A DNA stretch of 64,000 bases, taken from positions 1 to 64,000 of the IMG/VR virus record IMGVR_UViG_3300001782_000005. One strand, written 5' to 3'. Under the pieces are notes generated by a model. The model had not been told where the DNA came from. It searched no databases and saw only the letters and a list, made by a program, of their open reading frames with translations. The position numbers and the translations under genes were made by a program. This document shows positions 1 through 23,154 of the stretch, piece after piece (the first letter of the stretch is position 1; each line of letters begins with the position of its first letter).

Positions 1-714
1 AAAAAGCTGTCTCATTGGAATGCTAAAAATTTTGGTATCATTCATTCAAAGTCTCCCTATCTATTCTTTTGTGATGCTCATTGTATTATTGGTAGGGACT
101 GTCTTTTCAATATGTTCATATATTACAAGAAGAATGAAGAAGAGTTACACGGGTCGCTTCACCTTCCGATCTCGTACATGATGGAACGCCCCGGTATGGA
201 GTTGATTTATAAACCTAAACTTGATCTTGAGAAAGGAGCGCTACACTATTCATTTAGTAGGTATAGACGACCGTCTGATGGAAAACCTTATAAAGTTCCC
301 TGTATGTCAACCTGCGGGATGTTAATGAGTAGGAAGATAATGGTTGATGAACTTCAAATGTGGCCGAGTGAACTTGGAATCTACGGAGGTGGAGAAAACT
401 TTGTAAACTATTGTTTAGCAGTAATGGGTTATAACGTAAATATTTTTCCAAGACCTGCAATTTATCACTATGCAGAGCAGAGAGGGTATCATTGGAATTA
501 TAATGATTGGTTGAGAAATCGAATCATAGCCTTATATCTTGCTTGTGGTAGAGAGATAGCACAAAGGCTAGTTGATAATGCGAGGGGCCACCAGCAAGTA
601 AAACAAGACATGCTGGAGGATGTAGTAATCAAGTGCAACCCCCAACGAGAACATATTAAAAAGAGAACGTGTGTGGATATTTACGAATGGGTTGAACGCT
701 GGAAAGATTTTTAG
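1..714 (+). CDS. GT-A fold glycosyltransferase, polypeptide GalNAc-transferase (GT27)-like or GT2; 5'-truncated by the window
   Basis: Frame 1 is open from base 1 (KKLSHWNAKNFGIIHSKSPYLFFCDAHCII...), so the gene starts upstream of the window, not at 112. DxH metal motif FCDAH (DAH at 73-81), then KVPCMSTCGMLMSR, YGGGEN (382-399), IFPRPAIYH and RNR, in the order found in ppGalNAc-T catalytic domains. Confidence 0.8.
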   Translation, partial: KKLSHWNAKNFGIIHSKSPYLFFCDAHCIIGRDCLFNMFIYYKKNEEELHGSLHLPISYMMERPGMELIYKPKLDLEKGALHYSFSRYRRPSDGKPYKVPCMSTCGMLMSRKIMVDELQMWPSELGIYGGGENFVNYCLAVMGYNVNIFPRPAIYHYAEQRGYHWNYNDWLRNRIIALYLACGREIAQRLVDNARGHQQVKQDMLEDVVIKCNPQREHIKKRTCVDIYEWVERWKDF

Positions 715-3700: not shown

Positions 3701-4646
3701 TTGGGCAAATGGTTATCGACCAACAAAGATTAGAATTACTGCAACCAATAATGCTTCAAAGGGTTGGAACTTACAGTTAAGAGATAGTGGTGGAACTCCA
3801 CTTGCAACTACGGTGGTTCCGAATGGAGCTAGTCAAGTTGGTGTGGCTGATATAACTTGGGGCGCTAAAGATATGTATAGGATTTATGATTTAGATGCAC
3901 CAGGTACTGGAGAGATTGAGAATATTGAATTCTTCGTAGTTGGGGCTACTACAACCACAACAACAGCTCCTCCGGCTACAACGACTACAACTACCACGAC
4001 ATCTGCTCCAACCACAACGACTACTCCTGTTAGTCCCCTTGTGGCTTGTGATGGTTCTGTTTTTACTGATAATTTCTCAAGTATTACGGCTGATTGGTCT
4101 GAAACAGATGCAAGTAACATTGCATCACCAGGAGCTAACGGTTATGAGCATATTGTTCACGCAATAGATTTTGCTAGATTAATTGGTCAATTTGATATAG
4201 GTGGTGATTTCGATATCTGTCTGGAAGTAGATATATATGACCTTGGTTCAGCTCCCACTATCAGTACTTATATGCAATTTGCCTTGACTGAGGGTGTTAA
4301 AGGTGGTGCAGAAGCTTATGTCTGGATAAGAGGTGACGGAGCTGGTGGATTTGAGTATTATCTAGACGGAACTGATAATTTCAATTCTTGGGGTTCATAT
4401 GGGACAATAGATGCAACCAGTACTCACTATATCAGATTTACTAGAAGTGGAACTACTGTAACTGTTTATGTATGGAACCCAGCTATAGGATGGGAGTGGA
4501 ATGGAGTTCCTGGTGGTCTAGCAAGCACTAGTACATGGGATGTTGACCCCACTCCTACATTACAGTGGAGAGATAATAATCCTCCTACTGATCAAATATC
4601 TGGTACTATGGTCTCATTTAAGATCAATGTTGGAACCAAAATCTAG
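783..4646 (+). CDS. Giant modular Thr-rich putative virion appendage / tail-fibre-like protein (1287 aa)
   Basis: N-terminal ATYISSNQFRVSGD motif of the kind seen at tail-fibre N-termini. Globular modules are separated by poly-Thr linkers, with an internal AB-AB duplication and a C-terminal ConA-like beta-sandwich. Confidence 0.65.
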   Translation: MLATYISSNQFRVSGDRSAEFQTDRRVRANCGIDGYKYGTVQSASFSAGYTTVTLLESELTSNLTAVHYGVVSPFPPGSMPRIPGLAIVYDQEVSAVEFIEITGLASGQIYDLSLLLTTSEVTELRLQFNGDTGNNYQYAYHDGGVAGGAPSHSTNQSGAIDYIQFSHKCDVGTGRVQFGAKPIDSTAVIVHSSFSTYQDSNDFMKRELVGYYAGGLSSIKIYAAPGSTSYLSGRVTLTAQEEAIPTETTTTTTTVSTTLPPTPTTTTSTTTTSTTITPAPTTSTTTTTTTSTTVTVPTTTTTTTTVTTTTTTTTALITTTTAPSCIWEDHMDDGIVTPPWTPMGAPVEAGTTVIFQGVGTGYMDSGPVPFDCSSYYQTQARVRNNESVSSHIMSLLDMSSGPPYQTVVRIWSNTTGTYIEYQDSFGTTYWWDGLAWTIVGLTPAGPPIPDNIYFRFEFQFVKGNLIVNIYDCTMGIFISTGASPVPCATLMGGGGPLTGVYLGAYAGFGPTNTFYTEVDWFGFGCIPGSWPPCIPYTTTTTTTTTTAAPTTTTTPPGEWVSKFGSPNFWVCAVNCTWDGDSYNVAGPGLQINAAGTWYVGYRPTKIRITATNNASKGWTLRLRDSGNSTIATLLIPNGASQVAEADIGWFTKNLNNIVDDTAPGIGQIENIEFWEVGATTTTTTTTTTTTTFITTTTAPWAWGDHFDNGIVDTPPWSVTGAPVEAGTTVVIDDIKTNECLVTMFAYETGMWARCQARVRTPGSSRTTVMGLTDPGGAGPVLRIEVDQGLCYVSYYSMGAGPAWLYWDEKSMGWIPPPTPLTSFVPTMNMYYRYELQSDVNTIWVNIYNCAGILLFTIPPLAGAPWADLPPAYLYVMLGDCDPVFFDNYTEVDWFGFDLRYWPPCLPYTTTTSTSTTTTTTTAIPTTTTTSPPGEWEEKFGSPSFWTCAANCTWDGDSYNVAGPGLVIQAAGTWANGYRPTKIRITATNNASKGWNLQLRDSGGTPLATTVVPNGASQVGVADITWGAKDMYRIYDLDAPGTGEIENIEFFVVGATTTTTTAPPATTTTTTTTSAPTTTTTPVSPLVACDGSVFTDNFSSITADWSETDASNIASPGANGYEHIVHAIDFARLIGQFDIGGDFDICLEVDIYDLGSAPTISTYMQFALTEGVKGGAEAYVWIRGDGAGGFEYYLDGTDNFNSWGSYGTIDATSTHYIRFTRSGTTVTVYVWNPAIGWEWNGVPGGLASTSTWDVDPTPTLQWRDNNPPTDQISGTMVSFKINVGTKI
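1521..1748 (+). repeat. Thr/Ser/Pro-rich low-complexity tract (76 codons)
   Basis: ACN codon run inside the 1287-aa ORF. Confidence 0.95.
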
Positions 4647-4854
4647 ATGCTTGATATATGAAGATAGACCAAAAATCTGTAGGGATTTTCCGACTCTACA
4701 GACAAAACTTAAGAAACATTATCTATCTTGTACATATTGGTTTGATGAATTAGAGAGAAAAGGAGAATGTAGCAGATGTGGTGAATGTTGTGAACTTAAT
4801 AAAGTATTTACAGATAAGATTGGACCATGTCCATATCTAAGGAAGTTGACATAG
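4627..4854 (+). CDS. Small Cys-rich protein with YkgJ (CxxCxxCC)-like motifs in reversed order
   Basis: CLIYEDRPKICRDFP followed by CSRCGECC...CPYL. The ATG at 4627 has no clear SD and overlaps the preceding stop. Confidence 0.45.
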   Translation: MLEPKSRCLIYEDRPKICRDFPTLQTKLKKHYLSCTYWFDELERKGECSRCGECCELNKVFTDKIGPCPYLRKLT

Positions 4855-4893
4855 GGCGGTAACTTATTAGAGGGTTGCCGCCTTTCTTTTTTT
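4855..4893 (+). terminator. Rho-independent terminator
   Basis: 9-bp stem GGCGGTAAC/GTTGCCGCC (one G-U) followed by TTTCTTTTTTT. Confidence 0.8.
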
Positions 4894-4913: not shown

Positions 4914-5810
4914 ATGAACCTAATCATAAATTTCACTCCTACCGGCATGATTCCTACCAAGGAAATGACTCCTTATGTACCTATTACAATCAATGAAATT
5001 ATTGAAGATGTACACGAAGCGTACGAAATTGGTATTACTGTTGTTCACCTTCACGCAAGAGACAAGAAGACGGGTGAACCTACATATAAAGCAGAAGTTT
5101 ATCAAGATATTATTGAGGGAATTAGAAAATTTTCAAAAGATTTGGTTATTTGTGTTTCCTTGAGCGGTCGTACATTTAAAGAATTTGAAGAACGATCAGA
5201 GGTTTTACAACTTAATGGTAATGTAAAACCAGATATGGGAAGTTTAACTTTGAGTTCTGTAAATTTTAATTACCAAGCAAGTGTTAGCTCTCCAAAGATG
5301 ATACAGGACCTTGCAAGAGTGATGAAAACTCGTGGCATCCTGGCCGAACTTGAAGCATTTGACTCGGGTATGATCAATTATGCTAAATACTTGGAGAGAA
5401 AAGACTTATTAGATCCCCCTCACTATTTTAATTTATTATTTGGTAATATTGCGTGTGCTCAGGCAACTCTATTACATATGGGAGTTATGATAAATGATTT
5501 ACCCAATTGGTCTTATTGGAGTGCGGCTGGTGTAGGTGATGCACAATCTATGGTAAATTCAATTGCTATTGCCTACGGTGGTGGAGTAAGAGTTGGCCTT
5601 GAAGATAATATTTGGTACGACAAAGGCAGGACTAAACTTGCTAAAAATTCTGACCTATTAAAACGTGTTCATAATTTAGCTGAGGCAAATGAAAGAGAAC
5701 TTATGACTTCTGAAGAATTTAGAAGATTCCTAGTTCTTCAACAAGATGGGAATTATGGAAGAATTTGTGGTGGAGTGAAACTAGAAGGTTCTGATCAAAT
5801 AGGTTGGTAA
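4914..5810 (+). CDS. kce: 3-keto-5-aminohexanoate cleavage enzyme family (BKACE / DUF849)
   Basis: IINFTPTG start, VVHLHARD Zn-binding motif, PDMGSL, ELEAFD, GVRVGLEDN; length about 300 aa; SD GAGGAG. Confidence 0.9.
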   Translation: MNLIINFTPTGMIPTKEMTPYVPITINEIIEDVHEAYEIGITVVHLHARDKKTGEPTYKAEVYQDIIEGIRKFSKDLVICVSLSGRTFKEFEERSEVLQLNGNVKPDMGSLTLSSVNFNYQASVSSPKMIQDLARVMKTRGILAELEAFDSGMINYAKYLERKDLLDPPHYFNLLFGNIACAQATLLHMGVMINDLPNWSYWSAAGVGDAQSMVNSIAIAYGGGVRVGLEDNIWYDKGRTKLAKNSDLLKRVHNLAEANERELMTSEEFRRFLVLQQDGNYGRICGGVKLEGSDQIGW

Positions 5811-5811
5811 A

Positions 5812-6783
5812 ATGATATACGGAGATTATGAGATTTTTCACTATCATCCTAATATGATAGATCAGGTTGCAAAAGTGATAAAATACCTTTGGGGCGGAAA
5901 ACGCGATTTTAGAATTGACCATCTCAAATGGAAACATTATGAAAATCCTTATTCAAATTTTCCACACGGAATAGTTGCTTTATATAATAGAGAAGTGGTT
6001 GGTTTTAGAGGATATTCTCCTATGAAATGGAGAGTTAAAGGACAAGAGTTTAAAACTTTAATTGCTGGAGATACAGTTGTAGATCAGAAACATCGTATGA
6101 AAGGTTTATCAGTGGCGATGGGTCAAGCAGCAAATAAATATCAATCAAACTATAAGTTCCTTCTAAATTTTACCTCAGGAGGTACTTCAACACCAGGTTA
6201 TTTAAAATTGGGTTTTAGAAAATTTTTGGAGAAAAGTTATTATACAAGGCGTGCTTTTAAAGAAGATATAGAGATAAAAGGCGATTTTAGTGGGGTACTC
6301 TTTTTTGAAATTCCAGACCTAAAGAAAATTTGTGATCTTATTTTGAAAGAGGATAACTTTGATAAGATTACTCCAGTTCGTACTGAAGAATACTTCCAAT
6401 GGAAGATGAGAAATTCTAAAAATAAATATTTATTTTTTGGTTATAAAGACAGAAGCTACGTTATTTTCTCAACTCAACCAAATGGTAATAATGGTTATAT
6501 AGTTGATTACGTAGTTGAAAATGTTGAAGACCTCGACAATATTCTTCGTTTTATACTAAAGACAAAACCGTTTAATTTCACTATGGTTTATAATTATGGA
6601 GTTTGTAATAAGCTCTCTAAAGTTTTGAAAGGACTGAATTTTGAAGAATCAAGTATGACATGGCATTTACTAATACGACCTGTGAAAAAAGATTTCAGTG
6701 AAAGAGATTGGTTTGTTGAAGGAGTTGATACCCGAAAGATCGAGAACTGGAACATGAGAGCTATCTGTTCAGATGATGCTTAG
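5812..6783 (+). CDS. GNAT-family N-acyltransferase
   Basis: HLKWKHYENP, VVGFRG, GDTVVDQKHRMKGL (acyl-CoA loop), FLLNFT, GYLKLGF; starts 1 nt after the kce stop (translational coupling). Confidence 0.75.
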   Translation: MIYGDYEIFHYHPNMIDQVAKVIKYLWGGKRDFRIDHLKWKHYENPYSNFPHGIVALYNREVVGFRGYSPMKWRVKGQEFKTLIAGDTVVDQKHRMKGLSVAMGQAANKYQSNYKFLLNFTSGGTSTPGYLKLGFRKFLEKSYYTRRAFKEDIEIKGDFSGVLFFEIPDLKKICDLILKEDNFDKITPVRTEEYFQWKMRNSKNKYLFFGYKDRSYVIFSTQPNGNNGYIVDYVVENVEDLDNILRFILKTKPFNFTMVYNYGVCNKLSKVLKGLNFEESSMTWHLLIRPVKKDFSERDWFVEGVDTRKIENWNMRAICSDDA

Positions 6784-6835: not shown

Positions 6836-9800
6836 ATGGCTTGGGATAATGTTATAAATCTGTTTATAGATTCTTCTAAGGTTGATGAGAATCTTACAGA
6901 TTTTCCAGTTGCAATTGACTTAAGTAATTTTCCAGAGGTTTTTGTAGAGTTAACGGAAGCTGACCGAAAGAAAATTAAAGTCACAACTGATGCCTCCGGA
7001 AACAACCAATGTTATGTTGAGATTGAGTATTTTGATTCCACCGCTCAGGTTGGAATAATTCACACAAAACTTCCTGCCATTGATTCCACTGCAGATACTT
7101 CCTTCTATTTCTGGTATGATAAGGATGAAGCAGATAATACAACCTACGTTGGTGATATTAGTGAATCTCCTGCTCAAAATGTCTGGGATAATAATTTTGT
7201 TATGGTTATTCATCCACAAGATCCAAGTGGTAATGGAGTGGATGATATTAAAGACTCAACTAGTAACTCTAATGACGGAACTCCATTTAATTTTGAAGCT
7301 GGAGATCTTGTTGAGATTGGTGGAGGGATTCCTGGTCGAGCAGTTGTTTTTGAAGAAACTAAAAATCAACGTATTGGAGTGCCACACCACTCCACTTTAG
7401 CACCCACTCGCCTTTGCTTAGAGGTATTTGCAATCAATGAAAATCCAGCGTGGGATGGGCCTAATTGGAATACTAGATCAGACCATTTAGTTTCAAAAAC
7501 AGAAGCTGGTGGATATGCAGTAGGTTTGAATGAGTCAGGTTCGTATTGTACTGACCATTTATACTTTGACGTTTATAGAAACGGAACTTATGGTCGAGCG
7601 TGTGAACCATCATCCAATATTTCAGATGGGTGGCACTATGTTGCTTGTGATTATGATGGAAGATACGGTGTCCTTCAGATTGATGATACTGAGGTTCAGA
7701 TAAATGATGCTGGAGGAACTTATGATATTACTTATTCTAATAGTAATATGCTTCAAATAGGTTGTGAAGCTGGTCCAGGAACTAGTCCTCCAAGTCCAGC
7801 TCTGCTCTGGGAGGGCAAGATTGGTGAAGTCAGAATTTCTAATGCTTCCCGACCTGATGCTTGGAGAAAGGCAACATATCACAATTTATTTGGAACTCTT
7901 TTAAGGCAAACATGGACAACTACCACTACTACAACCACTACAACGACTACTACATCAACAACGACTTCTACAGCGAGTACTACCATTCCTTATTTTCCAA
8001 CAACAACTACGTCTACTACTACGACAACTTCTACCACAACCACTACAACTACGACAACAACAACTAGTACAACTACAACAACTTGTCCTCCTTTAGAGTA
8101 TGCCCTTGATCCTTCTTATACTAGTGCCGATATAACTCTATCTAACTGTAATTTAACAGCCACAAGTACTGGTTGGGATGGTGGTTGGGATACTACTTAT
8201 GCCGCTCCAGGTTTCCCTGTAGCAAGTGGCGGCAAATGGTATTGGGAAATTCACATTGATGTTGGCGGTGGCCAAATGCTTGGAGTTGAGAAGCTCCGAG
8301 AGACAAACAATCATGTAGGATCGAGCGCTGCTGGTTATGGAATACTCAACAATGGTAGTATATGGAATGGTAATTCTCAAGCTGGTGATTTGGGAGCTGA
8401 TTACGTTACTAACGATATAGTTATGATCGCACTAGATCTTAATAATCTTAAGCTCTGGTTTGGTCGTAATGGTAGTTGGTATGGAGCTGGTGCTAATCCA
8501 GCAACTGGTACTAATCCTGCATTTACTATCGCAAGTGGTGGGACTTACTATGCCGGATTTAGTTTGGGCGGCGGCACCGATAGACAGATAACGGTCAATT
8601 TCGGGGAGACATCATTTACCCATACTCCACCTTCTGGGTTTAATGCTCCTGAAGATTATACTACCACCACTACTACAACTACAACTAGTACAACTGTACC
8701 ACCAACGACTACATCTACGAGCACGACTACTAGTACAACTACAACTAGTACGACAACAACTACACTTCCTCCAACTACTTCAACAACGACTACTACAACC
8801 ACCACAACAACCACTACAACGACAACCTCTGCAACTACGACCACCAGTACGACTACCACAACGACAACCTCTACGTCGACTACTACTACGTATCCTCCTG
8901 GTCAACTAACGTGGGACCCAACCTGGAAGGCTGCACAGTTACAGTTATTCAATAGTAACCTTACTGTTAAATCAAATGCGAGTGGTTGGAAATCTGTGGG
9001 TGGAACACTTGGAAGAGCGTTTGGTAAGTGGTATTGGGAGATCACAATAGATGTTATGGCTAGCGGAAATAGCCATATGACGGGTATTGCTCAAAGTGGC
9101 CACCTTGTTGAAAACCGCTACCCTGGTCAAGAAACTACTAGTTATGGTTATTTTGATAACGGTCAGAAGTATCACAGCGGTGGTGGTTCTGTTTATGGAA
9201 ATAGCTATAGTGAGGGAAATATAATTGGAGTTGCTCTTGATTTGGATAGCGGTAAAATTTGGTTTGCTGTTAATAATGTCTGGCAAAATAGTGGTGATCC
9301 TGCTGCCGGAACAAATGCGGCTTTTAGCGGGATAGCTTCAGCAACTTGGTATCCATTTCAAGGAATTTACGACTCAGGTGACCAATCCTCAATAAACGGG
9401 GATTCTGTGACTCTAAACTATACCCCACCAACTGGATATTCGGCCCTAGGTGGAGAAAGTGTAACAACGACCACGACTACCACTAGTACGACTACGACAA
9501 CTTCCACTTCAACAAGCACGACTAGTACAACAACCACAACAAGTACGAGCACAACTACGACAACTCCTCCTCCGACTACTACCACAACAACTACTACAAC
9601 GACAACTAGTACGACAACAACGACAGCAACGACAACAACTAGCACGACAACTACCACTACATCTACAACTACAACTACCACAACTAGTACGACAACAACA
9701 AGTACTAGTACAACAACGACTACACCTCCTCCAACCACAACCTCAACTTCTACGACGACGACTACAACCAGTACGTCAACATCAACTTCTACCTCGACAT

Positions 9801-12800
9801 CTACAACTACTTCAACGAGTACGTCGACTTCTACAACTAGTACGACTACAACTTCTACAAGCACGTCTACCACAACTACTACTAGTCCTCCACTCTTTGA
9901 AATTAATGAAAGTTGTACTGATTTGTACGGTTCAACTCGTGTGTGTCAAAGTGTTACTCCAGATAGAACTTTCGAGATTACTAGTATAGTTATAGGATCG
10001 TGTCGAATTGTAGGTACTTCTGGTACAGCTAGACTAACTATATATACCTACCATCCTACTAATCCATATAGTGGAGTACTTTTAGGTACTTCGGATGATG
10101 TAGCTATTACAACTACTCCCACTACTCTTACATTCACTTTTGCTTCTCCTGTACAGATAGGAGCAAAATTCTGGGTGGTCATGGAGCCATCTGGAACAGC
10201 AACAAATGCTTATACGTATAGGACTAATTTTAATGCATACGCAGGTGGTTCTATAGGTTACTCATGGGATGATGGTGTAAATTGGGCTTTTGATGCCTTC
10301 GATATGTGTGATATTAAGATCTATGGTAATGATCTTGGCCCAACTACAACAACTACTACAACTTCTACTACTACAACTACAACTACAACCAGCACAACTA
10401 CAAGTACGACAACCTCTACGTCGACCTCGACAAGCACAACTACTACAACTACAACCAGCACAACTACAAGTACGTCAACTACAACCAGTACGACTACAAC
10501 CACAACAACTTCAACTTCTACAACTACAACCTCAACTTCCACTAGTACGACTACAACTTCTACAACAACTAGTACTACGACGAGTACTTCAACGACTTCC
10601 ACTAGTACGACTACAACAACAACTTCTACTAGCACGACGACGAGTACTTCAACGACTTCCACTAGTACGACAACTACAACCAGTACGACAACAACTTCTA
10701 CTAGCACGACGACTACTACAGTTCCTCCAACTACTACAACGTCAACCACAACATCGACTACCACTACTTCAACGACCTCTACTACGACAAGCACTACGAC
10801 AAGCACGACTACCACAACTACGACAACTACAACTTTACCAATTGTCTCGTTTGTAGATGACTATTTTGATAACGCTGTCATTGATGCTTGGTGGCACCAA
10901 GAGCCTGGTTCTACTGGTTCGTTCGTCGAAGCATCGTTAACTATAAATAGTAGTCAAGAGAATATTTTAGCTGGTGGTACAGCAGACTTTAACTGGCTAT
11001 ACCAGGGTATGATTGCTGGAGATTTCGACGTAGTTGCTAAGTTGATTAGCCTTACAAACTTCAATCAAAATCAACAGATAACTGGTTTAGTTGCTTATGT
11101 AGATAATAATAATTGGGCAGCAGTAGGAAAGAAATACTACTTTGGTCAACAAGCGTGGGTTACTCACAGGGTAGGTGGTCCTTACCATGAGAACTATACT
11201 GCTGACACAAACCTACCGTTCTTCTTGAGGATTAGAAGGATCGGTTCTCTATTTGAGACTTTCTACTCAACAAATGGAATAACTTGGACTCCGTATGATC
11301 CTGTTGCTGGTAGTCTTGATAGTACAGCTAATGTTAAGATAGGTCTATTTGCTAATGATCAATATACTACACAATTTAGTGCAGAGTATGACTTTACTCT
11401 TAATAGTGGTTCATTTATAAGTACAACTACAACGACGACAACTAGCACGACAACTACTACGACCTCGACATCTACGACTACAACCACTGCTCCTTGTCCA
11501 GAGTATACTTATTGTGATTCTACTTGTGCTCCTTGCTATGAATTAACTCTCAGTGGTTGGTCTGGATCTTGTGATTTAGCTGATTGCTCAGCTCTTAATG
11601 ATACTTATATCTTAGAACCATATCATGGCCCAGGTGGATGTAAGTGGGCACATTATCTTGGTGTTCTATATGACGATGATAATGAGATAAAGATAACTTG
11701 TGATTATGGAATCTGGGAACTTAGAGTAACAGTAGATGCAACCGCTTGCCTGATATTTGAGGCTGATGCAGTTGTAAATACGTGTCCTCCAGAAGATTAC
11801 ATTTCTTGGACACAAGTGGGTGGAGATTGTGTAGGTGGTTCGTTTACTCTTGTTGGACAACCTTGTCCAACTACTACTACGACTACGACTACGACAACTA
11901 GTACAACTACAACCACAACAACTAGTACAACGACTACTACGACTACTACGACTACTTCAACCATCACTACGACTACACCGCCTGGCATTCCATATGGAAT
12001 CTGTGCTGATACGTCATTCGGTGGAGCGATGTATCGAGCTAATCAACTGACTTGGTCTGATGCACGTGACTCAACTGCTGCTATTGGTCAAGTATTACTA
12101 AATGCAATTGCTACTGGCAATGCAATTAATGTTGTTCACTATCAAAGTAAGGGTACTGATTATTACAATCTTTGGAGGTTCTACTTTAGATTTGATTTAA
12201 GTAATATTCCACTCGGAACGACTATTACAGATGCAAGAATTGGTTTGTATTGGCCCACAGATATTCCTGTAACTACCCCTGCACGCTGGGTAGTTCAGCA
12301 AGGCCCAACAACATTTGATCTTGACGATTTTGGTGGGTTTACTGGACCTGAATTTGGTCATATGCTTTTTGATCCAGATCAGAAATATAATTATGTTTAT
12401 TTAAATTCTGCTGGAAGAGCATATTTAGAGAGCCAAATCGGTGGATATGCGTATCTTTGCCTCCGTGAGTATCATCACGATTATTTAGATGTGCCGCCAG
12501 TTTTCGAGAACCTTAAAACTTATTCAACTTTTTCAGAACCACCACTTGCTAAGGTGGATGTTTATTATGATCCTGATTTAGTCCCGTGTACTTGGTTATC
12601 AAGTTATGAATACGATGTAATTGATAGGTATAAACCAGGTACAATACATGATTTACACTCTGTTGCTTATGGTAATGGCAGATATGTTGCAGTTGGTGAT
12701 GGTGGGAAGGTAATTACCTCTACTGACGACGGAGAAACTTGGATTCAGTTATCTACTTTTACATCTGAAGATCTATTTGTTGTAAGGTATCTGAATTGTA

Positions 12801-15181
12801 CTTGGTTTATTGGCGGACGAAATGTAATTTATACTTCTCAAAATGGTACTAATTGGTCATATAGAGTAAACCCTGCAAATGGTTCAGGTAGAATTGTCCG
12901 AGGATTTGCTTGTAATGAAGGCGGATTAATTGTTGCTGCTGCATGGTCTCATACTATTGAAGAACGCTCTTCTTATTCTACTGACGGAGGACTTACGTGG
13001 ACTGCCCTTCCTAATGGGTGTCCAGATATGTTTAACTTCACTGATTTAGTTTATGGTGATGGAATATTTGTTGGTTGTGGTGGCTCCGGAGTTACTGTGC
13101 CAAGATTTACATATTCATATGATGGACTTAATTGGAGCGCTGCTGATGAGTGGCTTGCTGATAATGCCGTTTATGGACTTGCTTTTAACGGTAGCAGATT
13201 CTTTGCTGTCGGTTCACCAGGTCGTGCTTGGATATCAGATGATGGTGTAAATTGGACTAGGACTTCTCAAGCAGAGGGTGCTCCACGTCTAGATTATGAA
13301 GATGCTTGTTATGGTGTGGTATGGAATGGATGTCAATTTGTAATTGCAGCACATGATACCAGTTCTTCAGATCGTCAAAAGATTATAACAACCTTAGATG
13401 GTTATCAACCATTTACATATGAATATGACCAAGATAGTGGAGAAAGCGGATTAACTGCCATTGCATTTGATGGTATAAGTCGTCACGTACTTGTGGGTTA
13501 CGATGGCCAGGTTTTAACTGCTGATATTCGTACAATAACCACGACTACAACTACAACTATTACTATACCGCCAATAACTACAACTACAATTTGTCCACCT
13601 GATCTAACTGAGGATGATTTTAATGATGGAGCAATAGGTTCTTGGTGGACTCTTAGGGACAAACAAGGTGGAGATTTTGTTGAATCCGGTGGGTATATGA
13701 ATATACTCTCTGGCCCAGATGGATGTGATGCAATAGATCCATGTACTCCAACTTACATTGCTCAGTGTATTGACCCAAATAGACCGTATGACTATTGGGT
13801 TAAAGTTCTCACTCCAACCCTTACTTATGATGGTCAAGAGTATGGTGTGATGTCTAGAAATCTTGCTAGTCTTGATATCTATACTAAAATTGGAGTAAGA
13901 CGAGAAGGTGGGTCTTTATATGTTTATGGTTTGTATTCTGAAACTGGAACTTTAATTGACCAGATAATTCCTCTTCCTCTTGGTATCCCACAAGTTTGGT
14001 TAAGAATATCTAGAGATTCGGGAGGGCTCTTTAGATTTTACTATGCTTTGAGTCAACCTTATTCTATATCTGATTGGACAATACTTAGTTTGGTTAGTGG
14101 GGTATTTACCGATAGTGATAGGCAGAGAGTTGGTCTGTTTGCTACGAACCCATTTCACACAACTACAACGACAACTACAACAACTACAACTACAACAACT
14201 AGTACACTTACAACAGTTAGTACGACAATACCACTCACACCAAGTACAACCACAGTTACATATGCAAGTACTACCACAACGATTACGGATTTTGGTTTAT
14301 GGCAACCTGACTGTACTGGAACTCCTGGTTATCATACTGGTTTACAAGTCTCACAAAGTGTCTATGTTGATCCAGGCACTTGGAAATTTGACGCAATTGA
14401 AATTGGTGATATGGTTAGCACGAGCGGTTATGCTAAAGTTATAATTTATCGAGATACTGGAGGAAATCCAGCCAGTGGAATCTATGTGGGTCAGACAGGA
14501 GTACAGCCAATTTCAGGAGGTTTAGAACCCTATACTTTTTATCTTACTGTTCCTCGACCTATTGTCATTAGTCAAGGGTATGATTATCACCTTGTTGTTA
14601 CTGCTACTGATGCTGGAGGAAATATTGCATACGGACAGACAGTAACCCTATACGCATCTGCAGAGCACTATCCACCAGGTCTAATGTGGTATTATGACGA
14701 GGGAGGTGGTGGTTGGATACAAGACTCTTCTTCAGATGCCTTATGTATTTTTGCACGTGGAATATTAGTTTATACACCTGATCCACCTAGCGGGAATCAG
14801 TGTGAAGATAGATGTGCTTACAGATATTATGTAACGGTATCTGGTTTAACTGGAACTTGTGGATCTTATGATTGTAGCGTATTTAATGGTACCTATGTTT
14901 TGGATCGTCGTCCGAGTCTTTGTGAGTGGAGGCAAACAATAGAAACCGAAATTATGGGGAATCCAATCACAATAACTGCGTCTATAACTATTGGTTATTG
15001 TGGAATTAATTGTTATCTATGGTTATTTAGTATTGGCACCTCTGGATCTGGAACTTGTGGTCTCGCTACTCAATTTGTAACATTACGTGAAGAAGGTGAG
15101 AATTGTCCTCCATTAACCGGATGGTGGAGTGATCCCGGAGCTTGTAATTATGGGGGAACAATTATAGTGTCGCATAGCTAG
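6836..15181 (+). CDS. Giant modular mucin-like putative virion appendage protein (2781 aa)
   Basis: N-terminal DUF2341-like + LamG-like region, two SPRY/B30.2-like domains (about 8095-8655 and 8900-9460; GKWYWEI, IALDLxxxKxWF), DUF1349-like beta-sandwiches, beta-propeller repeats (VAVGDGGKVITSTDDGETW, about 12640-13530), two Cys-rich modules and many Thr tracts. Confidence 0.7.
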   Translation: MAWDNVINLFIDSSKVDENLTDFPVAIDLSNFPEVFVELTEADRKKIKVTTDASGNNQCYVEIEYFDSTAQVGIIHTKLPAIDSTADTSFYFWYDKDEADNTTYVGDISESPAQNVWDNNFVMVIHPQDPSGNGVDDIKDSTSNSNDGTPFNFEAGDLVEIGGGIPGRAVVFEETKNQRIGVPHHSTLAPTRLCLEVFAINENPAWDGPNWNTRSDHLVSKTEAGGYAVGLNESGSYCTDHLYFDVYRNGTYGRACEPSSNISDGWHYVACDYDGRYGVLQIDDTEVQINDAGGTYDITYSNSNMLQIGCEAGPGTSPPSPALLWEGKIGEVRISNASRPDAWRKATYHNLFGTLLRQTWTTTTTTTTTTTTTSTTTSTASTTIPYFPTTTTSTTTTTSTTTTTTTTTTTSTTTTTCPPLEYALDPSYTSADITLSNCNLTATSTGWDGGWDTTYAAPGFPVASGGKWYWEIHIDVGGGQMLGVEKLRETNNHVGSSAAGYGILNNGSIWNGNSQAGDLGADYVTNDIVMIALDLNNLKLWFGRNGSWYGAGANPATGTNPAFTIASGGTYYAGFSLGGGTDRQITVNFGETSFTHTPPSGFNAPEDYTTTTTTTTTSTTVPPTTTSTSTTTSTTTTSTTTTTLPPTTSTTTTTTTTTTTTTTTSATTTTSTTTTTTTSTSTTTTYPPGQLTWDPTWKAAQLQLFNSNLTVKSNASGWKSVGGTLGRAFGKWYWEITIDVMASGNSHMTGIAQSGHLVENRYPGQETTSYGYFDNGQKYHSGGGSVYGNSYSEGNIIGVALDLDSGKIWFAVNNVWQNSGDPAAGTNAAFSGIASATWYPFQGIYDSGDQSSINGDSVTLNYTPPTGYSALGGESVTTTTTTTSTTTTTSTSTSTTSTTTTTSTSTTTTTPPPTTTTTTTTTTTSTTTTTATTTTSTTTTTTSTTTTTTTSTTTTSTSTTTTTPPPTTTSTSTTTTTTSTSTSTSTSTSTTTSTSTSTSTTSTTTTSTSTSTTTTTSPPLFEINESCTDLYGSTRVCQSVTPDRTFEITSIVIGSCRIVGTSGTARLTIYTYHPTNPYSGVLLGTSDDVAITTTPTTLTFTFASPVQIGAKFWVVMEPSGTATNAYTYRTNFNAYAGGSIGYSWDDGVNWAFDAFDMCDIKIYGNDLGPTTTTTTTSTTTTTTTTSTTTSTTTSTSTSTSTTTTTTTSTTTSTSTTTSTTTTTTTSTSTTTTSTSTSTTTTSTTTSTTTSTSTTSTSTTTTTTSTSTTTSTSTTSTSTTTTTSTTTTSTSTTTTTVPPTTTTSTTTSTTTTSTTSTTTSTTTSTTTTTTTTTTLPIVSFVDDYFDNAVIDAWWHQEPGSTGSFVEASLTINSSQENILAGGTADFNWLYQGMIAGDFDVVAKLISLTNFNQNQQITGLVAYVDNNNWAAVGKKYYFGQQAWVTHRVGGPYHENYTADTNLPFFLRIRRIGSLFETFYSTNGITWTPYDPVAGSLDSTANVKIGLFANDQYTTQFSAEYDFTLNSGSFISTTTTTTTSTTTTTTSTSTTTTTAPCPEYTYCDSTCAPCYELTLSGWSGSCDLADCSALNDTYILEPYHGPGGCKWAHYLGVLYDDDNEIKITCDYGIWELRVTVDATACLIFEADAVVNTCPPEDYISWTQVGGDCVGGSFTLVGQPCPTTTTTTTTTTSTTTTTTTSTTTTTTTTTTSTITTTTPPGIPYGICADTSFGGAMYRANQLTWSDARDSTAAIGQVLLNAIATGNAINVVHYQSKGTDYYNLWRFYFRFDLSNIPLGTTITDARIGLYWPTDIPVTTPARWVVQQGPTTFDLDDFGGFTGPEFGHMLFDPDQKYNYVYLNSAGRAYLESQIGGYAYLCLREYHHDYLDVPPVFENLKTYSTFSEPPLAKVDVYYDPDLVPCTWLSSYEYDVIDRYKPGTIHDLHSVAYGNGRYVAVGDGGKVITSTDDGETWIQLSTFTSEDLFVVRYLNCTWFIGGRNVIYTSQNGTNWSYRVNPANGSGRIVRGFACNEGGLIVAAAWSHTIEERSSYSTDGGLTWTALPNGCPDMFNFTDLVYGDGIFVGCGGSGVTVPRFTYSYDGLNWSAADEWLADNAVYGLAFNGSRFFAVGSPGRAWISDDGVNWTRTSQAEGAPRLDYEDACYGVVWNGCQFVIAAHDTSSSDRQKIITTLDGYQPFTYEYDQDSGESGLTAIAFDGISRHVLVGYDGQVLTADIRTITTTTTTTITIPPITTTTICPPDLTEDDFNDGAIGSWWTLRDKQGGDFVESGGYMNILSGPDGCDAIDPCTPTYIAQCIDPNRPYDYWVKVLTPTLTYDGQEYGVMSRNLASLDIYTKIGVRREGGSLYVYGLYSETGTLIDQIIPLPLGIPQVWLRISRDSGGLFRFYYALSQPYSISDWTILSLVSGVFTDSDRQRVGLFATNPFHTTTTTTTTTTTTTTSTLTTVSTTIPLTPSTTTVTYASTTTTITDFGLWQPDCTGTPGYHTGLQVSQSVYVDPGTWKFDAIEIGDMVSTSGYAKVIIYRDTGGNPASGIYVGQTGVQPISGGLEPYTFYLTVPRPIVISQGYDYHLVVTATDAGGNIAYGQTVTLYASAEHYPPGLMWYYDEGGGGWIQDSSSDALCIFARGILVYTPDPPSGNQCEDRCAYRYYVTVSGLTGTCGSYDCSVFNGTYVLDRRPSLCEWRQTIETEIMGNPITITASITIGYCGINCYLWLFSIGTSGSGTCGLATQFVTLREEGENCPPLTGWWSDPGACNYGGTIIVSHS
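8660..8890 (+). repeat. Thr/Ser/Pro-rich tract (77 codons)
   Basis: ACN run between the two SPRY-like domains. Confidence 0.95.
9464..9886 (+). repeat. Thr/Ser/Pro-rich tract (141 codons)
   Basis: ACN/AGT/TCN run with interspersed PPP. Confidence 0.95.
10343..10834 (+). repeat. Longest Thr/Ser-rich tract (164 codons)
   Basis: Almost pure Thr/Ser with a single VPP; mixed ACT/ACA/ACG/ACC codons. Confidence 0.95.
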
Positions 15182-18194: not shown

Positions 18195-18290
18195 TGTCTC
18201 AAGGGTTGAGATTGAGTTCTTGCAAGGCAATGCAGGAATAATTAATTCTAATGTTAATAATCTAATTCTATACCAAGGAGCAATACTGTA

Positions 18291-18420
18291 GTTGGAACAA
18301 ATCAATAAAGGAGATAGGATCTAGATGAAGATTTACAAAAAGGTAGTCATAGACATTGAATCAAGTAAGATCTTGGAAGAAGTGTCTTACGACTACAACG
18401 GTCCTATCGCTCAAATGCAG
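18291..18420 (+). repeat. Copy 1 of a ~130-bp dispersed repeat (upstream motif + SD + 32-codon leader)
   Basis: GTTGGAACAAA...GGAGATAGGATCTAGATGAAGATTTAC...GGTCCTATCGCTCAAATGCAG; near-identical copy at 23023-23154. Confidence 0.9.
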
Positions 18421-23019: not shown

Positions 23020-23022
23020 ACA

Positions 23023-23154
23023 GTTGGAACAAACTGATAAAGGGGAGATAGGATCTAGATGAAGATTTACGAAAAGGTAGTCATAGATATTGAATCTGGT
23101 AAAATACTGGATGAAGTGTCCTACGACTATGAAGGTCCTATCGCTCAAATGCAG
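23023..23154 (+). repeat. Copy 2 of the ~130-bp dispersed repeat
   Basis: Same upstream motif, SD and leader coding sequence as 18291-18420, with scattered substitutions. Confidence 0.9.

What the first reader, a model, noticed from the sequence alone, without database searches (positions are those of the whole stretch)
4914..6783. Kce (BKACE) + GNAT cassette inserted between two giant structural genes
Seen: a coupled two-gene unit after a terminator, inside the GT/mucin locus. Established: BKACE enzymes cleave beta-keto acids with acetyl-CoA, releasing acetoacetate and an acyl-CoA (3-aminobutyryl-CoA for Kce); GNATs transfer acyl groups from acyl-CoA to amines. Inference: the pair supplies and installs an unusual N-acyl group on an amino sugar of the virion glycan, rather than boosting lysine fermentation, whose other genes are absent from this window.
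Basis: partly seen in the sequence, partly recalled or inferred. Interest (0 to 1): 0.62.

Follow-up and report, generated by a model that had tools for sequence, protein, structure and literature searches.

The report
Phage acyl-CoA maker plus acyltransferase
A 277-kb phage carries a tightly linked gene pair, a zinc enzyme that should make an unusual acyl-CoA and a double-GNAT acyltransferase that should use it; the same pairing recurs in sugar-coat gene clusters of many bacteria, some archaea and other phages, which points to an undescribed way of decorating glycans, here probably on the phage's mucin-like fibre proteins.

Summary
4914-5810 encodes a full-length BKACE (Pfam 259 bits) and 5812-6783 a 323-aa tandem-GNAT acyltransferase. 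The two genes are 1 nt apart, lie behind a strong terminator, and sit at the head of a row of giant Thr/Ser-rich proteins next to GT1/GT9/GT2/methyltransferase genes.

It is not Kce. It scores below the Kce equivalog cut-off, the residue that binds the substrate's amino group (Kce Glu14) is Ile, and no lysine-fermentation genes are present.

It belongs to a very conserved BKACE subfamily (65-88% identity across phyla). In at least 63 of 80 species-representative genomes this subfamily sits directly beside an acyltransferase of one of four families: small GNAT, tandem GNAT, FemAB-like, or NeuD/PglB/VioB sugar N-acyltransferase. Outside Flavobacteriaceae the locus usually also holds GT2, DegT, WbqC and flippase genes.

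The association holds in reverse: 27 of 33 assessable close tandem-GNAT homologues have the BKACE just upstream. A second, unrelated phage lineage carries BKACE+GNAT inside its own glycosyltransferase island.

Best reading: a two-enzyme module that makes a non-acetyl acyl-CoA and transfers it to a glycoconjugate amine. The acyl group and the acceptor are unknown, and the phage encodes no aminotransferase. I found no published link between BKACE and glycans. The finding is real, moderately novel and testable.

The parts
1..714 (+). 3' part of a GT2 glycosyltransferase gene. The whole gene encodes 313 aa and starts at the far end of the 277-kb record, across a 94-bp terminal repeat.
   Evidence: Pfam Glycos_transf_2; join across the repeat gives one open frame of 313 aa
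783..4646 (+). 1287-aa protein with a mucin-like Thr/Ser/Pro tract (80% S/T over 60 aa from residue 262). It has no family match and is presumed to be a fibre or decoration protein.
   Evidence: homologous 1328-aa gene at the same place in related phages
4627..4854 (+). Small CxxCxxCC (YkgJ-like) Zn/Fe-binding protein. The ORF is listed from 4540, but the likely start is the ATG at 4627 (75 aa).
   Evidence: Pfam PF03692 25.7 bits; 76-aa gene at the same place in related phages; translation
4853..4893 (+). Intrinsic-terminator-like hairpin (13-bp stem, 6 GC pairs) with a T-run, ending the upstream unit.
   Evidence: sequence
4914..5810 (+). BKACE-family Zn enzyme (298 aa), not Kce. It has Zn ligands H45/H47/E230, catalytic E147, R226 and D231. 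Ile13 stands in place of Kce Glu14 and Phe149 in place of Kce Tyr145.
5812..6783 (+). Tandem-GNAT acyltransferase (323 aa). The N-terminal domain carries the CoA-binding motif (R95, G98, G104). The C-terminus is of fixed length behind the invariant W313.
6836..15181 (+). 2781-aa protein with a SPRY domain and pure Ser/Thr tracts (100% over 60 aa). It follows the pair after 52 nt with no terminator between, so co-transcription is likely.
15216..27273 (+). Three more giant Thr/Ser-tract proteins (992, 1564 and 1404 aa; the first has ConA-like domains). They lie upstream of the tail-sheath gene at 29124-31106.

Best explanation
The two genes form a self-contained acyl-donor/acyl-transfer module. 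The BKACE takes a neutral beta-keto acid from the host pool plus acetyl-CoA and releases acetoacetate and a non-acetyl short acyl-CoA. This is the family's reaction and is inferred here from an intact active site. The translationally coupled tandem-GNAT enzyme transfers that acyl group to an amine, which is inferred from fold, CoA motif and gene pairing. In this phage the target is most likely the glycan, or the glycoprotein itself, that the neighbouring GT1/GT9/GT2/methyltransferase genes build on the Thr/Ser-rich tracts of the giant fibre-like proteins encoded around the pair. That step is inferred from context alone. The identity of the acyl group is unknown. Two single-locus hints (acetoacetate-CoA ligase, 3-hydroxyacyl-CoA dehydrogenase) point weakly towards C4 units such as acetoacetyl or 3-hydroxybutyryl.
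For: (1) Intact BKACE. The Pfam match is full length. The Zn triad, catalytic Glu, Arg226 and Asp231 are invariant in 217 subfamily sequences.
(2) The subfamily is very conserved (65-88% identity in Chloroflexota, Planctomycetota, Bacteroidota, Omnitrophota, Hermodarchaeota and phages), which suggests one fixed chemistry.
(3) In 80 species-representative genomes the BKACE is directly adjacent to an acyltransferase in at least 63: small GNAT 32, NeuD/PglB/VioB hexapeptide sugar N-acyltransferase 24, tandem GNAT 4, Acetyltransf_6 3. What these four families share is an acyl-CoA donor.
(4) The reverse also holds. Of the 33 assessable metagenome loci whose tandem GNAT is at least 32% identical to the window's, 27 have the BKACE upstream on the same strand, 26 of them 5-104 bp away. 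None of the more distant homologues does.
(5) Only these two genes are shared between the window's lineage and L008/L012/L013/L102. In the BKACE tree the tandem-GNAT-linked phage and cellular genes form one clade (SH-aLRT 94), and partner type follows the tree (16 changes vs 47 when shuffled).
(6) Glycan context. L008 is a polysaccharide locus with epimerase, GT4, Wzx and GT2. L009-L011 carry GT2s, CapK_C and AglB/STT3. L103 reads Wzx-DegT-WbqC-acyltransferase-BKACE-GT2. Among 148 other neighbours from 45 non-Flavobacteriaceae loci, the commonest families are GT2 (17), DegT (6), WbqC (6) and sugar dehydratase/epimerase (4). An unrelated phage lineage has BKACE+GNAT at the end of an epimerase/GT/LicD/methyltransferase island.
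(7) In L013 a bona fide acetoacetate-CoA ligase (TIGR01217, 792 bits) follows the BKACE by 79 bp. This fits acetoacetate as by-product, which inhibits BKACE unless removed (PMC11961710).
(8) In the window the pair has the glycosyltransferase genes and the upstream mucin-like protein on one side and four further mucin-like giants on the other.
Against: There is no biochemical evidence for any member of this subfamily. The substrate and acyl group cannot be read from sequence. The phage genome has no DegT aminotransferase, SDR dehydratase/epimerase, polysaccharide deacetylase or nucleotidyltransferase, so a free sugar amine would have to come from the host. The tandem GNAT's closest folds are Eis-like enzymes and N-myristoyltransferases, which acylate proteins or aminoglycosides. 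The 32 small-GNAT pairs (31 of them in the Flavobacteriaceae-dominated clade) stand in variable, mostly non-glycan surroundings. The Tyr held to be general in BKACEs is Phe in the whole subfamily, as in BsfD, which does different chemistry (PMC12871164), though also as in PDB 3NO5 and 3FA5. The acetoacetate-CoA ligase link is a single locus.
Confidence: 0.55

Rival explanations
1. Same donor logic but a protein acceptor. The tandem GNAT acylates a lysine or an N-terminus of the giant virion proteins (or of a host protein), as N-myristoyltransferase and Eis do, using the BKACE-made acyl-CoA.
For: The best structural matches are Eis-like proteins and N-myristoyltransferases (Z 19-20 over about 290 residues), with the C-termini aligned. 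The C-terminal length is fixed behind the invariant W313. From my own knowledge, NMT and Eis use the C-terminal carboxylate as base. The phage has no gene to make an amino sugar. The pair heads the operon of the giant proteins.
Against: Cellular homologues of the same pair sit in polysaccharide loci. In other lineages the partner is a NeuD/PglB/VioB-type sugar N-acyltransferase next to DegT. Fold similarity within GNATs does not fix the acceptor.
Confidence: 0.2
2. The pair makes a small N-acylated metabolite (an amine, an amino acid or an aminoglycoside-like compound) rather than decorating a polymer.
For: The Flavobacteriaceae BKACE+small-GNAT pairs are free-standing two-gene units beside unrelated housekeeping genes. 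The phage L012 pair lies among replication genes. Eis-type enzymes act on small amines.
Against: Glycosyltransferase, aminotransferase and flippase genes dominate the neighbourhoods outside Flavobacteriaceae. In two independent phage lineages the pair lies in a glycosyltransferase island.
Confidence: 0.1
3. Non-canonical BKACE chemistry as in BsfD. The enzyme C-acetylates and decarboxylates a malonyl-like beta-carbonyl acid that the acyltransferase has installed (for example N-malonyl to N-acetoacetyl), so it acts after the transferase rather than before it.
For: The Tyr145 equivalent is Phe in all 217 subfamily members, as in BsfD, where this change is discussed as part of its divergent chemistry (PMC12871164).
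Against: Phe also occurs in PDB 3NO5 and 3FA5, which are ordinary DUF849 structures. The acetoacetate-CoA ligase next to the pair in L013 argues for release of acetoacetate. A polymer- or nucleotide-bound substrate has no precedent in the family.
Confidence: 0.08
4. An auxiliary metabolic gene for catabolism: a true Kce that boosts lysine fermentation or ketone-body metabolism of the host.
For: [quoted passage not shown]
Against: The score is far below the equivalog cut-off of 382. Glu14 is replaced by Ile. The genome has no lysine aminomutase, and none appears among the 25 commonest families of the 148 neighbours tallied. The constant partner is an acyltransferase.
Confidence: 0.03
5. Host contamination or a chimeric assembly.
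For: The BKACE is 70-80% identical to cellular proteins.
Against: Two further viral contigs carry identical sequence, and the synteny is conserved in diverged relatives from other samples. GC3 equals that of the flanking phage genes. The record has a 94-bp terminal repeat and is rated complete.
Confidence: 0.01

Closest known systems
Characterised BKACE enzymes: Kce of Cloacimonas (PDB 2Y7D/2Y7F), triacetate acetoacetate-lyase CsTAL, BKACE15 of Paracoccus (8RIO/8RIP/9HNF)
   Same: Same family and fold class by sequence (E 1e-27 to 1e-35 to PDB chains). Same Zn triad and catalytic Glu. Expected reaction: beta-keto acid + acetyl-CoA gives acetoacetate + acyl-CoA (PMC12871164, PMC11961710).
   Different: All characterised members work in catabolism (lysine, phloroglucinol, carnitine, aromatics). 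This subfamily is coupled to acyltransferases and glycan genes. Ile replaces the amino-binding Glu14 of Kce, Phe replaces Tyr145, and the substrate is unknown.
BsfD of the flavophos pathway (PDB 9ZSC series; PMC12871164)
   Same: A BKACE homologue used for biosynthesis rather than degradation, and it also has Phe at the Tyr145 position.
   Different: BsfD has a roughly 20-residue insertion with Arg91 for a phosphonate substrate and makes no thioester. Nothing here indicates a phosphonate, and the partner gene is an acyltransferase.
Tandem-GNAT N-acyltransferases: Eis and Eis-like proteins (2HV2, 2I00, 3N7Z, 3RYO), N-myristoyltransferases, MAB_4324
   Same: Two GNAT domains in one chain, Z 19-20 over about 290 residues, CoA motif in the first domain, C-terminus aligned with theirs.
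   Different: Only 10-15% identity, and no sequence-level PDB hit. The protein is 323 aa and lacks Eis's third domain and NMT's N-terminal extension. It is paired with a BKACE, which none of those is.
Amino-sugar N-acylation cassettes (DegT aminotransferase + PglD/NeuD/VioB acyltransferase) of O-antigen, capsule and flagellin-glycan loci
   Same: In about 24 of 80 genomes the BKACE sits directly beside exactly such an acyltransferase, often with DegT, WbqC, GT2 and a flippase.
   Different: Known cassettes draw acetyl-CoA or other donors from general metabolism. A dedicated BKACE donor-maker has not been described in the papers I could search. The window's transferase is a GNAT, not a hexapeptide protein, and no aminotransferase is present.
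Virus-encoded glycosylation of virion fibres or capsids (giant-virus fibril glycans with their own sugar N-acetyltransferases; glycosylated mycobacteriophage virions). This comparison rests on my own knowledge and was not retrieved here.
   Same: A virus-encoded glycosyltransferase island lies next to heavily Thr/Ser-rich structural proteins.
   Different: No virus-encoded nucleotide-sugar pathway is present here, and a BKACE has not been reported in such islands.

Membership tests
BKACE (Pfam PF05853, DUF849) | Full-length match to the family profile above the gathering score | tested here: met
   259 bits vs cut-off 24.8, profile positions 2-273 of 274; PDB relatives at E 4e-35 to 1e-23
BKACE (Pfam PF05853, DUF849) | Zn site His-x-His + Glu and the catalytic Glu (Kce H46/H48/E230, E143) | tested here: met
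   H45, H47, E230 and E147 align with them and are conserved in 216-217 of 217 subfamily sequences
BKACE (Pfam PF05853, DUF849) | Tyr at the Kce Tyr145 position, said to be present in all BKACEs (PMC12871164) | tested here: not met
   Phe149 here and Phe in 217 of 217. PDB 3NO5 and 3FA5 also have Phe, so the feature is not universal.
BKACE (Pfam PF05853, DUF849) | Catalysis: beta-keto acid + acetyl-CoA gives acetoacetate + acyl-CoA | not testable with these tools
   Only indirect: an acetoacetate-CoA ligase lies beside a homologous pair in L013
[quoted passage not shown] | Score at or above the NCBIfam equivalog cut-off (NF052387, 382 bits) | tested here: not met
   224.5 bits
[quoted passage not shown] | Glu14, which binds the 5-amino group of the substrate (PMC10470551) | tested here: not met
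   Ile13 in the window; Ile 210, Leu 6, Val 1 of 217
[quoted passage not shown] | Lysine-fermentation gene context | tested here: not met
   No LAM_C match in the 277-kb genome; no such family among the 25 commonest families of the 148 neighbours tallied
GNAT superfamily, tandem-GNAT (Eis/NMT-like) architecture | Two GNAT folds in one chain | tested here: met
   Model pLDDT 92.7; Foldseek E 1.7e-15, TM 0.62-0.67; Z 20.4 to 2HV2 and 20.2 to NMT 4QBJ
GNAT superfamily, tandem-GNAT (Eis/NMT-like) architecture | Acyl-CoA pyrophosphate-binding motif (R/Q-x-x-G-x-G/A) after strand 4 | tested here: met
   R95, G98 and G104 are at least 90% conserved and M103 is invariant in 21 homologues; Pfam Acetyltransf_9 covers residues 13-136
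GNAT superfamily, tandem-GNAT (Eis/NMT-like) architecture | C-terminal carboxylate reaching the active site as general base (Eis, NMT; from my own knowledge) | tested here: inconclusive
   19 of 21 homologues end exactly 10 residues after the invariant W313, and the model's C-terminus aligns with the chain ends of NMT and Eis. The geometry was not inspected.
Eis proper | Third, SCP2-like C-terminal domain and about 400 aa | tested here: not met
   323 aa; targets of 380-400 aa are only partly covered (TM by target 0.51-0.56)
NeuD/PglB/VioB hexapeptide sugar N-acyltransferases | Left-handed beta-helix with hexapeptide repeats | tested here: not met
   The window protein is a GNAT. The hexapeptide type is the BKACE partner in other lineages only (TIGR03570, 188.6 vs 160.8 bits).

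The most novel reading that the evidence does not exclude
A widespread and so far undescribed pathway in which a dedicated BKACE makes one specific non-acetyl acyl-CoA (possibly a C4 unit such as acetoacetyl or 3-hydroxybutyryl) for glycan N-acyltransferases of at least four different families in bacteria, archaea and phages. Phages captured the two-gene module at least twice and use it to tailor the glycan coat of mucin-like virion fibres.
Probability: 0.4. Interest if true: 0.75.

Novelty: new variant of a known kind. Interest (0 to 1): 0.6.

Why it matters
BKACEs are so far known from degradative pathways, plus one phosphonate antibiotic. A biosynthetic role as donor-maker for glycan tailoring would give the family a new physiological function. 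It could also explain how some of the unusual N-acyl groups of bacterial surface sugars are supplied.

The subfamily is abundant: about 8000 close homologues were scored, in many phyla. It also occurs in cultivated Flavobacteriaceae, so the idea can be tested by ordinary genetics and enzymology.

For phage biology it adds to the evidence that large phages glycosylate, and further decorate, mucin-like fibre proteins with their own enzymes. That bears on host recognition and on masking of virions.

Tried and rejected
- PHROGs: no match for either protein.
- NCBIfam and PDB by sequence: nothing for the GNAT.
- Literature: searches for BKACE or DUF849 with polysaccharide or glycosyltransferase terms found no paper linking the family to glycans. 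WbqC and Cj1324 searches gave nothing usable for the mechanism. A search on phage virion glycosylation was unproductive. The Kce structure paper (PMC3149333) is not held, so residue roles come from PMC10470551 and PMC12871164.
- Acetoacetate-CoA ligase as a general neighbour: found in one locus only.
- Profile comparison of the small-GNAT and tandem-GNAT families: not significant (hhalign probability 0.6%). They are treated as separate families; the small one was shown to be GNAT by Pfam instead (18 of 20 members).
- A conserved third gene of the cassette: none. Only the two genes are shared across lineages.
- Genes replacing the BKACE beside close tandem GNATs: no consistent substitute. One locus has a 3-hydroxyacyl-CoA dehydrogenase, kept as a weak lead only.
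- Protein Atlas for the 1287-aa neighbour: only weak viral hits under 0.8.
No statement on physical binding is made.
- The search for related loci with the wide GNAT alignment failed for lack of a conserved stretch and was repeated with closer sequences.
- One look-up (L098) found no record.
- Not used: the reads tools, other genetic codes and the large representative protein search.
Full report
**What the window is.** The window is the first 64 kb of a 277,131-bp viral record with terminal repeats, rated complete. The repeat is 94 bp. Joining the ends restores an intact 313-aa GT2 gene whose 3' part is window 1-714. A tail-sheath gene lies at 29124-31106, so this is a jumbo myovirus-like phage.

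**The observation.** ORFs lie exactly at 4914-5810 (298 aa) and 5812-6783 (323 aa) on the + strand.
- The first matches Pfam BKACE over its whole length (E 6e-77, 259 bits).
- The second matches GNAT Acetyltransf_9 at the cut-off (25.3 vs 25 bits). It has no PHROG, NCBIfam or PDB sequence match.
- The stop of the first gene and the start of the second are 1 nt apart.
- A hairpin with a 13-bp stem and a T-run at 4853-4893 closes the upstream unit. No + strand terminator follows the pair, and the 2781-aa gene starts 52 nt later.

**Surroundings.**
- Upstream, across the record's ends, lie a pectate-lyase-like protein, a radical-SAM/SPASM protein, GT1, GT9, an O-methyltransferase, a second methyltransferase and the GT2.
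- The 1287-aa protein follows (783-4646), then a small CxxCxxCC protein.
- Downstream come proteins of 2781, 992, 1564 and 1404 aa.
- All five giants contain mucin-like tracts of 60-100% Ser/Thr over 60 residues. The 2781-aa protein has a SPRY domain and the 992-aa protein has ConA-like domains.

**Not an artefact and not a recent insertion.**
- Two further viral contigs carry the same 12-13 kb at 100% identity. Diverged relatives (74-83% DNA identity) keep the order GT2, giant protein, small Cys protein, BKACE, GNAT, giant proteins.
- GC3 of the two genes (0.25 and 0.24) equals that of the flanking giants (0.24).

**The BKACE is not Kce.**
- It scores 224.5 bits on the Kce equivalog model, whose cut-off is 382.
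- Aligned to Kce (PDB 2Y7D), the Zn ligands (H45, H47, E230), the catalytic Glu (E147), R226 and D231 are present.
- Kce Glu14 binds the 5-amino group of the substrate and is Trp in the triacetate lyase (PMC10470551). Here it is Ile13.
- Across 217 members of the subfamily the catalytic residues are conserved in 216-217 of 217. Position 13 is Ile, Leu or Val, never acidic. A neutral substrate is the reasonable inference, so 3-aminobutyryl-CoA is not the product.
- The Tyr145 position is Phe in all 217. It is also Phe in BsfD, which C-acetylates and decarboxylates instead of making a thioester (PMC12871164), and in PDB 3NO5 and 3FA5. I keep this as a caveat and as a low-probability rival.

**The GNAT.** Fifteen homologues were found by the word search, and 21 sequences were aligned.
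- The model is confident (pLDDT 92.7, pTM 0.89) and shows two GNAT domains.
- Nearest structures are Eis-like proteins (2HV2: Z 20.4, rmsd 3.7, 297 aligned) and N-myristoyltransferases (4QBJ: Z 20.2, rmsd 4.0, 288 aligned), at 10-15% identity.
- The CoA motif (R95, G98, G104) is conserved in the first domain.
- The chains end at a fixed distance after the invariant W313, and the model's C-terminus aligns with those of NMT and Eis. From my own knowledge, both of those use the terminal carboxylate as base.
- It is an acyl-CoA-dependent N-acyltransferase by every test available. Its acceptor cannot be read from the fold.

**The decisive comparative result: the BKACE subfamily.** The subfamily is abundant and very conserved. 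Of 8000 candidates, 7997 scored E <= 0.001, and the best 120 are 70-100% identical. In one genome per species, 216 loci were found; the best 80 come from Chloroflexota, Planctomycetota, Bacteroidota, Omnitrophota, Acidobacteriota, Pseudomonadota and a Hermodarchaeota archaeon, at 65-74% identity.

I clustered the neighbours and typed them. The BKACE is directly adjacent to an acyltransferase in at least 63 of the 80 loci:

| Partner family | Loci |
|---|---|
| Small GNAT, about 215 aa (18 of 20 members match Acetyltransf_1) | 32 |
| Hexapeptide NeuD/PglB/VioB sugar N-acyltransferase (TIGR03570, above cut-off) | 24 |
| Window-type tandem GNAT | 4 |
| Acetyltransf_6 | 3 |
| Weaker cases | a few more |

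- Partner type follows the BKACE tree (16 changes against 47 for shuffled labels).
- The window groups with two related phages (SH-aLRT 99), then another phage (L012), then two cellular-looking contigs (L008, L013), all with tandem GNATs (clade support 94).

**The reverse test.** I scanned metagenomes for the tandem GNAT and kept 80 loci.
- 33 of those loci have a tandem GNAT at least 32% identical to the window's and enough upstream sequence to judge. Of these, 27 have the BKACE upstream on the same strand, 26 of them 5-104 bp away.
- No locus with a more distant homologue has it.
- Between the window's lineage and L008, L012, L013 and L102, only these two genes are shared. The BKACE is 73-80% identical and the GNAT 25-37%.

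The pair is thus a mobile two-gene module with a rigid first enzyme and an adaptable second one.

**Context of the module.**
- L008 is a polysaccharide locus (epimerase, GT4, two Wzx-type flippases, GT2).
- L009-L011 have GT2s, Acetyltransf_6, CapK_C ligases and an AglB/STT3 oligosaccharyltransferase.
- L103 reads Wzx, DegT, WbqC, hexapeptide acyltransferase, BKACE, GT2.
- L102 reads Wzx, BKACE, tandem GNAT.
- Among 148 non-acyltransferase neighbours (three genes either side) from 45 non-Flavobacteriaceae loci, the commonest families are GT2 (17), DegT (6), WbqC (6) and sugar dehydratase/epimerase (4). No lysine-fermentation family appears among the 25 commonest families.
- A second phage lineage, in a separate deep BKACE clade, has BKACE plus a 162-aa GNAT at the end of an island of epimerase, Gly_transf_sug, two GT2s, LicD and a methyltransferase, next to the terminase.
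- In Flavobacteriaceae, by contrast, the BKACE+small-GNAT pair is a free-standing unit beside varying housekeeping genes. Only one of four loci examined had glycan genes nearby.
- The L012 phage pair lies among replication genes.

**Chemistry.** BKACEs convert a beta-keto acid and acetyl-CoA into acetoacetate and the acyl-CoA shortened by two carbons. They are promiscuous and are inhibited by acetoacetate (PMC12871164, PMC11961710).
- In L013 a true acetoacetate-CoA ligase (TIGR01217, 792 bits vs cut-off 521) lies 79 bp after the BKACE. This fits removal of that by-product, but it is a single case.
- Beside one close tandem GNAT that lacks a BKACE there is a 3-hydroxyacyl-CoA dehydrogenase.
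- Together these two hints point weakly to C4 units. I give this no more weight than a lead.

**Limits for the phage itself.** Six-frame family searches of the whole genome found no DegT aminotransferase, no SDR epimerase/dehydratase, no polysaccharide deacetylase, no nucleotidyltransferase and no lysine aminomutase. A free sugar amine would therefore have to come from the host. Otherwise the acceptor is a protein amine or something else.

**Conclusion.**
- Shown: the genes, their intact catalytic motifs, the coupling, the two-way conserved pairing, the mobility of the pair, and the glycan context in many lineages, including two phage lineages.
- Inferred: that the BKACE product is the GNAT's donor, that the acceptor is a glycoconjugate on the Thr/Ser-rich fibre proteins, and that canonical chemistry applies.
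- Unknown: the beta-keto acid, the acyl group and the acceptor.
It fails on the Kce/3-aminobutyryl detail and on 'inserted'.
- In the library I could search, no paper links BKACE or DUF849 to glycan biosynthesis. The characterised members are catabolic, or in one case make a phosphonate.
- I rate it a new variant of a known kind, of moderate to good interest, with cheap decisive experiments available in cultivated carriers.

**Housekeeping.** The reads tools, alternative genetic codes and the large representative protein search were not used. 

Noticed in passing
window 783-27273: Five consecutive giant genes (1287, 2781, 992, 1564 and 1404 aa) all carry near-pure Thr/Ser tracts, up to 100% S/T over 60 residues. 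They also carry lectin-like domains (SPRY, ConA-like). The 2781-aa gene holds an internal DNA repeat around 10370-10680 (78% self-similarity). GC skew turns negative at 8001-12000 inside this + strand gene.
   Followed up: partly
window 4540-4854 (likely start 4627): A small CxxCxxCC (YkgJ-like) metal-binding protein overlaps the end of the 1287-aa gene. Only the C-terminal half of the Pfam domain matches. A 76-aa counterpart is conserved at the same place in related phages. Its role is unknown, and it is not shared with cellular BKACE-GNAT loci.
   Followed up: partly
L094 10607-13862 (genome 267806-271061): Upstream of the glycosyltransferases the phage encodes a pectate-lyase-like beta-helix protein (a possible depolymerase or tail spike) and a radical-SAM/SPASM enzyme, with unannotated 305-aa and 345-aa genes around them.
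   Followed up: no
window 1-94 and genome end (L094 19839-19932): The record's terminal repeat is 94 bp and cuts through the GT2 gene, so the record's ends look like an assembly break of a circular or permuted map rather than physical genome ends.
   Followed up: yes
L057 7386-8921 and L091 7419-8882: In a Planctomycetota and a Thermoanaerobaculales genome the BKACE open frame carries about 200 extra N-terminal residues with no Pfam match. This could be a fusion or only an upstream-extended ORF call.
   Followed up: no
L039-L093 (Flavobacteriaceae loci): The BKACE+small-GNAT pair looks vertically inherited in Flavobacteriaceae, since the tree follows the genera. It stands alone beside unrelated genes (topoisomerase, pseudouridine synthase, TonB receptor, beta-lactamase-fold protein). 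This suggests a conserved cellular role not tied to a variable glycan locus.
   Followed up: partly
L103 3938-9851; L025, L038, L053, L059, L061, L065: A compact recurrent operon, Wzx-DegT-WbqC-hexapeptide acyltransferase-BKACE-GT2, occurs in Prolixibacteraceae and Bacteroidales. WbqC-like proteins are uncharacterised. The operon resembles lipid-carrier-based addition of a modified amino sugar.
   Followed up: partly
L124 849-1700 and 3076-4086: Beside a close tandem-GNAT homologue that lacks a BKACE lie an Hbd-type 3-hydroxyacyl-CoA dehydrogenase and a ketopantoate-reductase-like enzyme. They may be an alternative source of the acyl donor.
   Followed up: no
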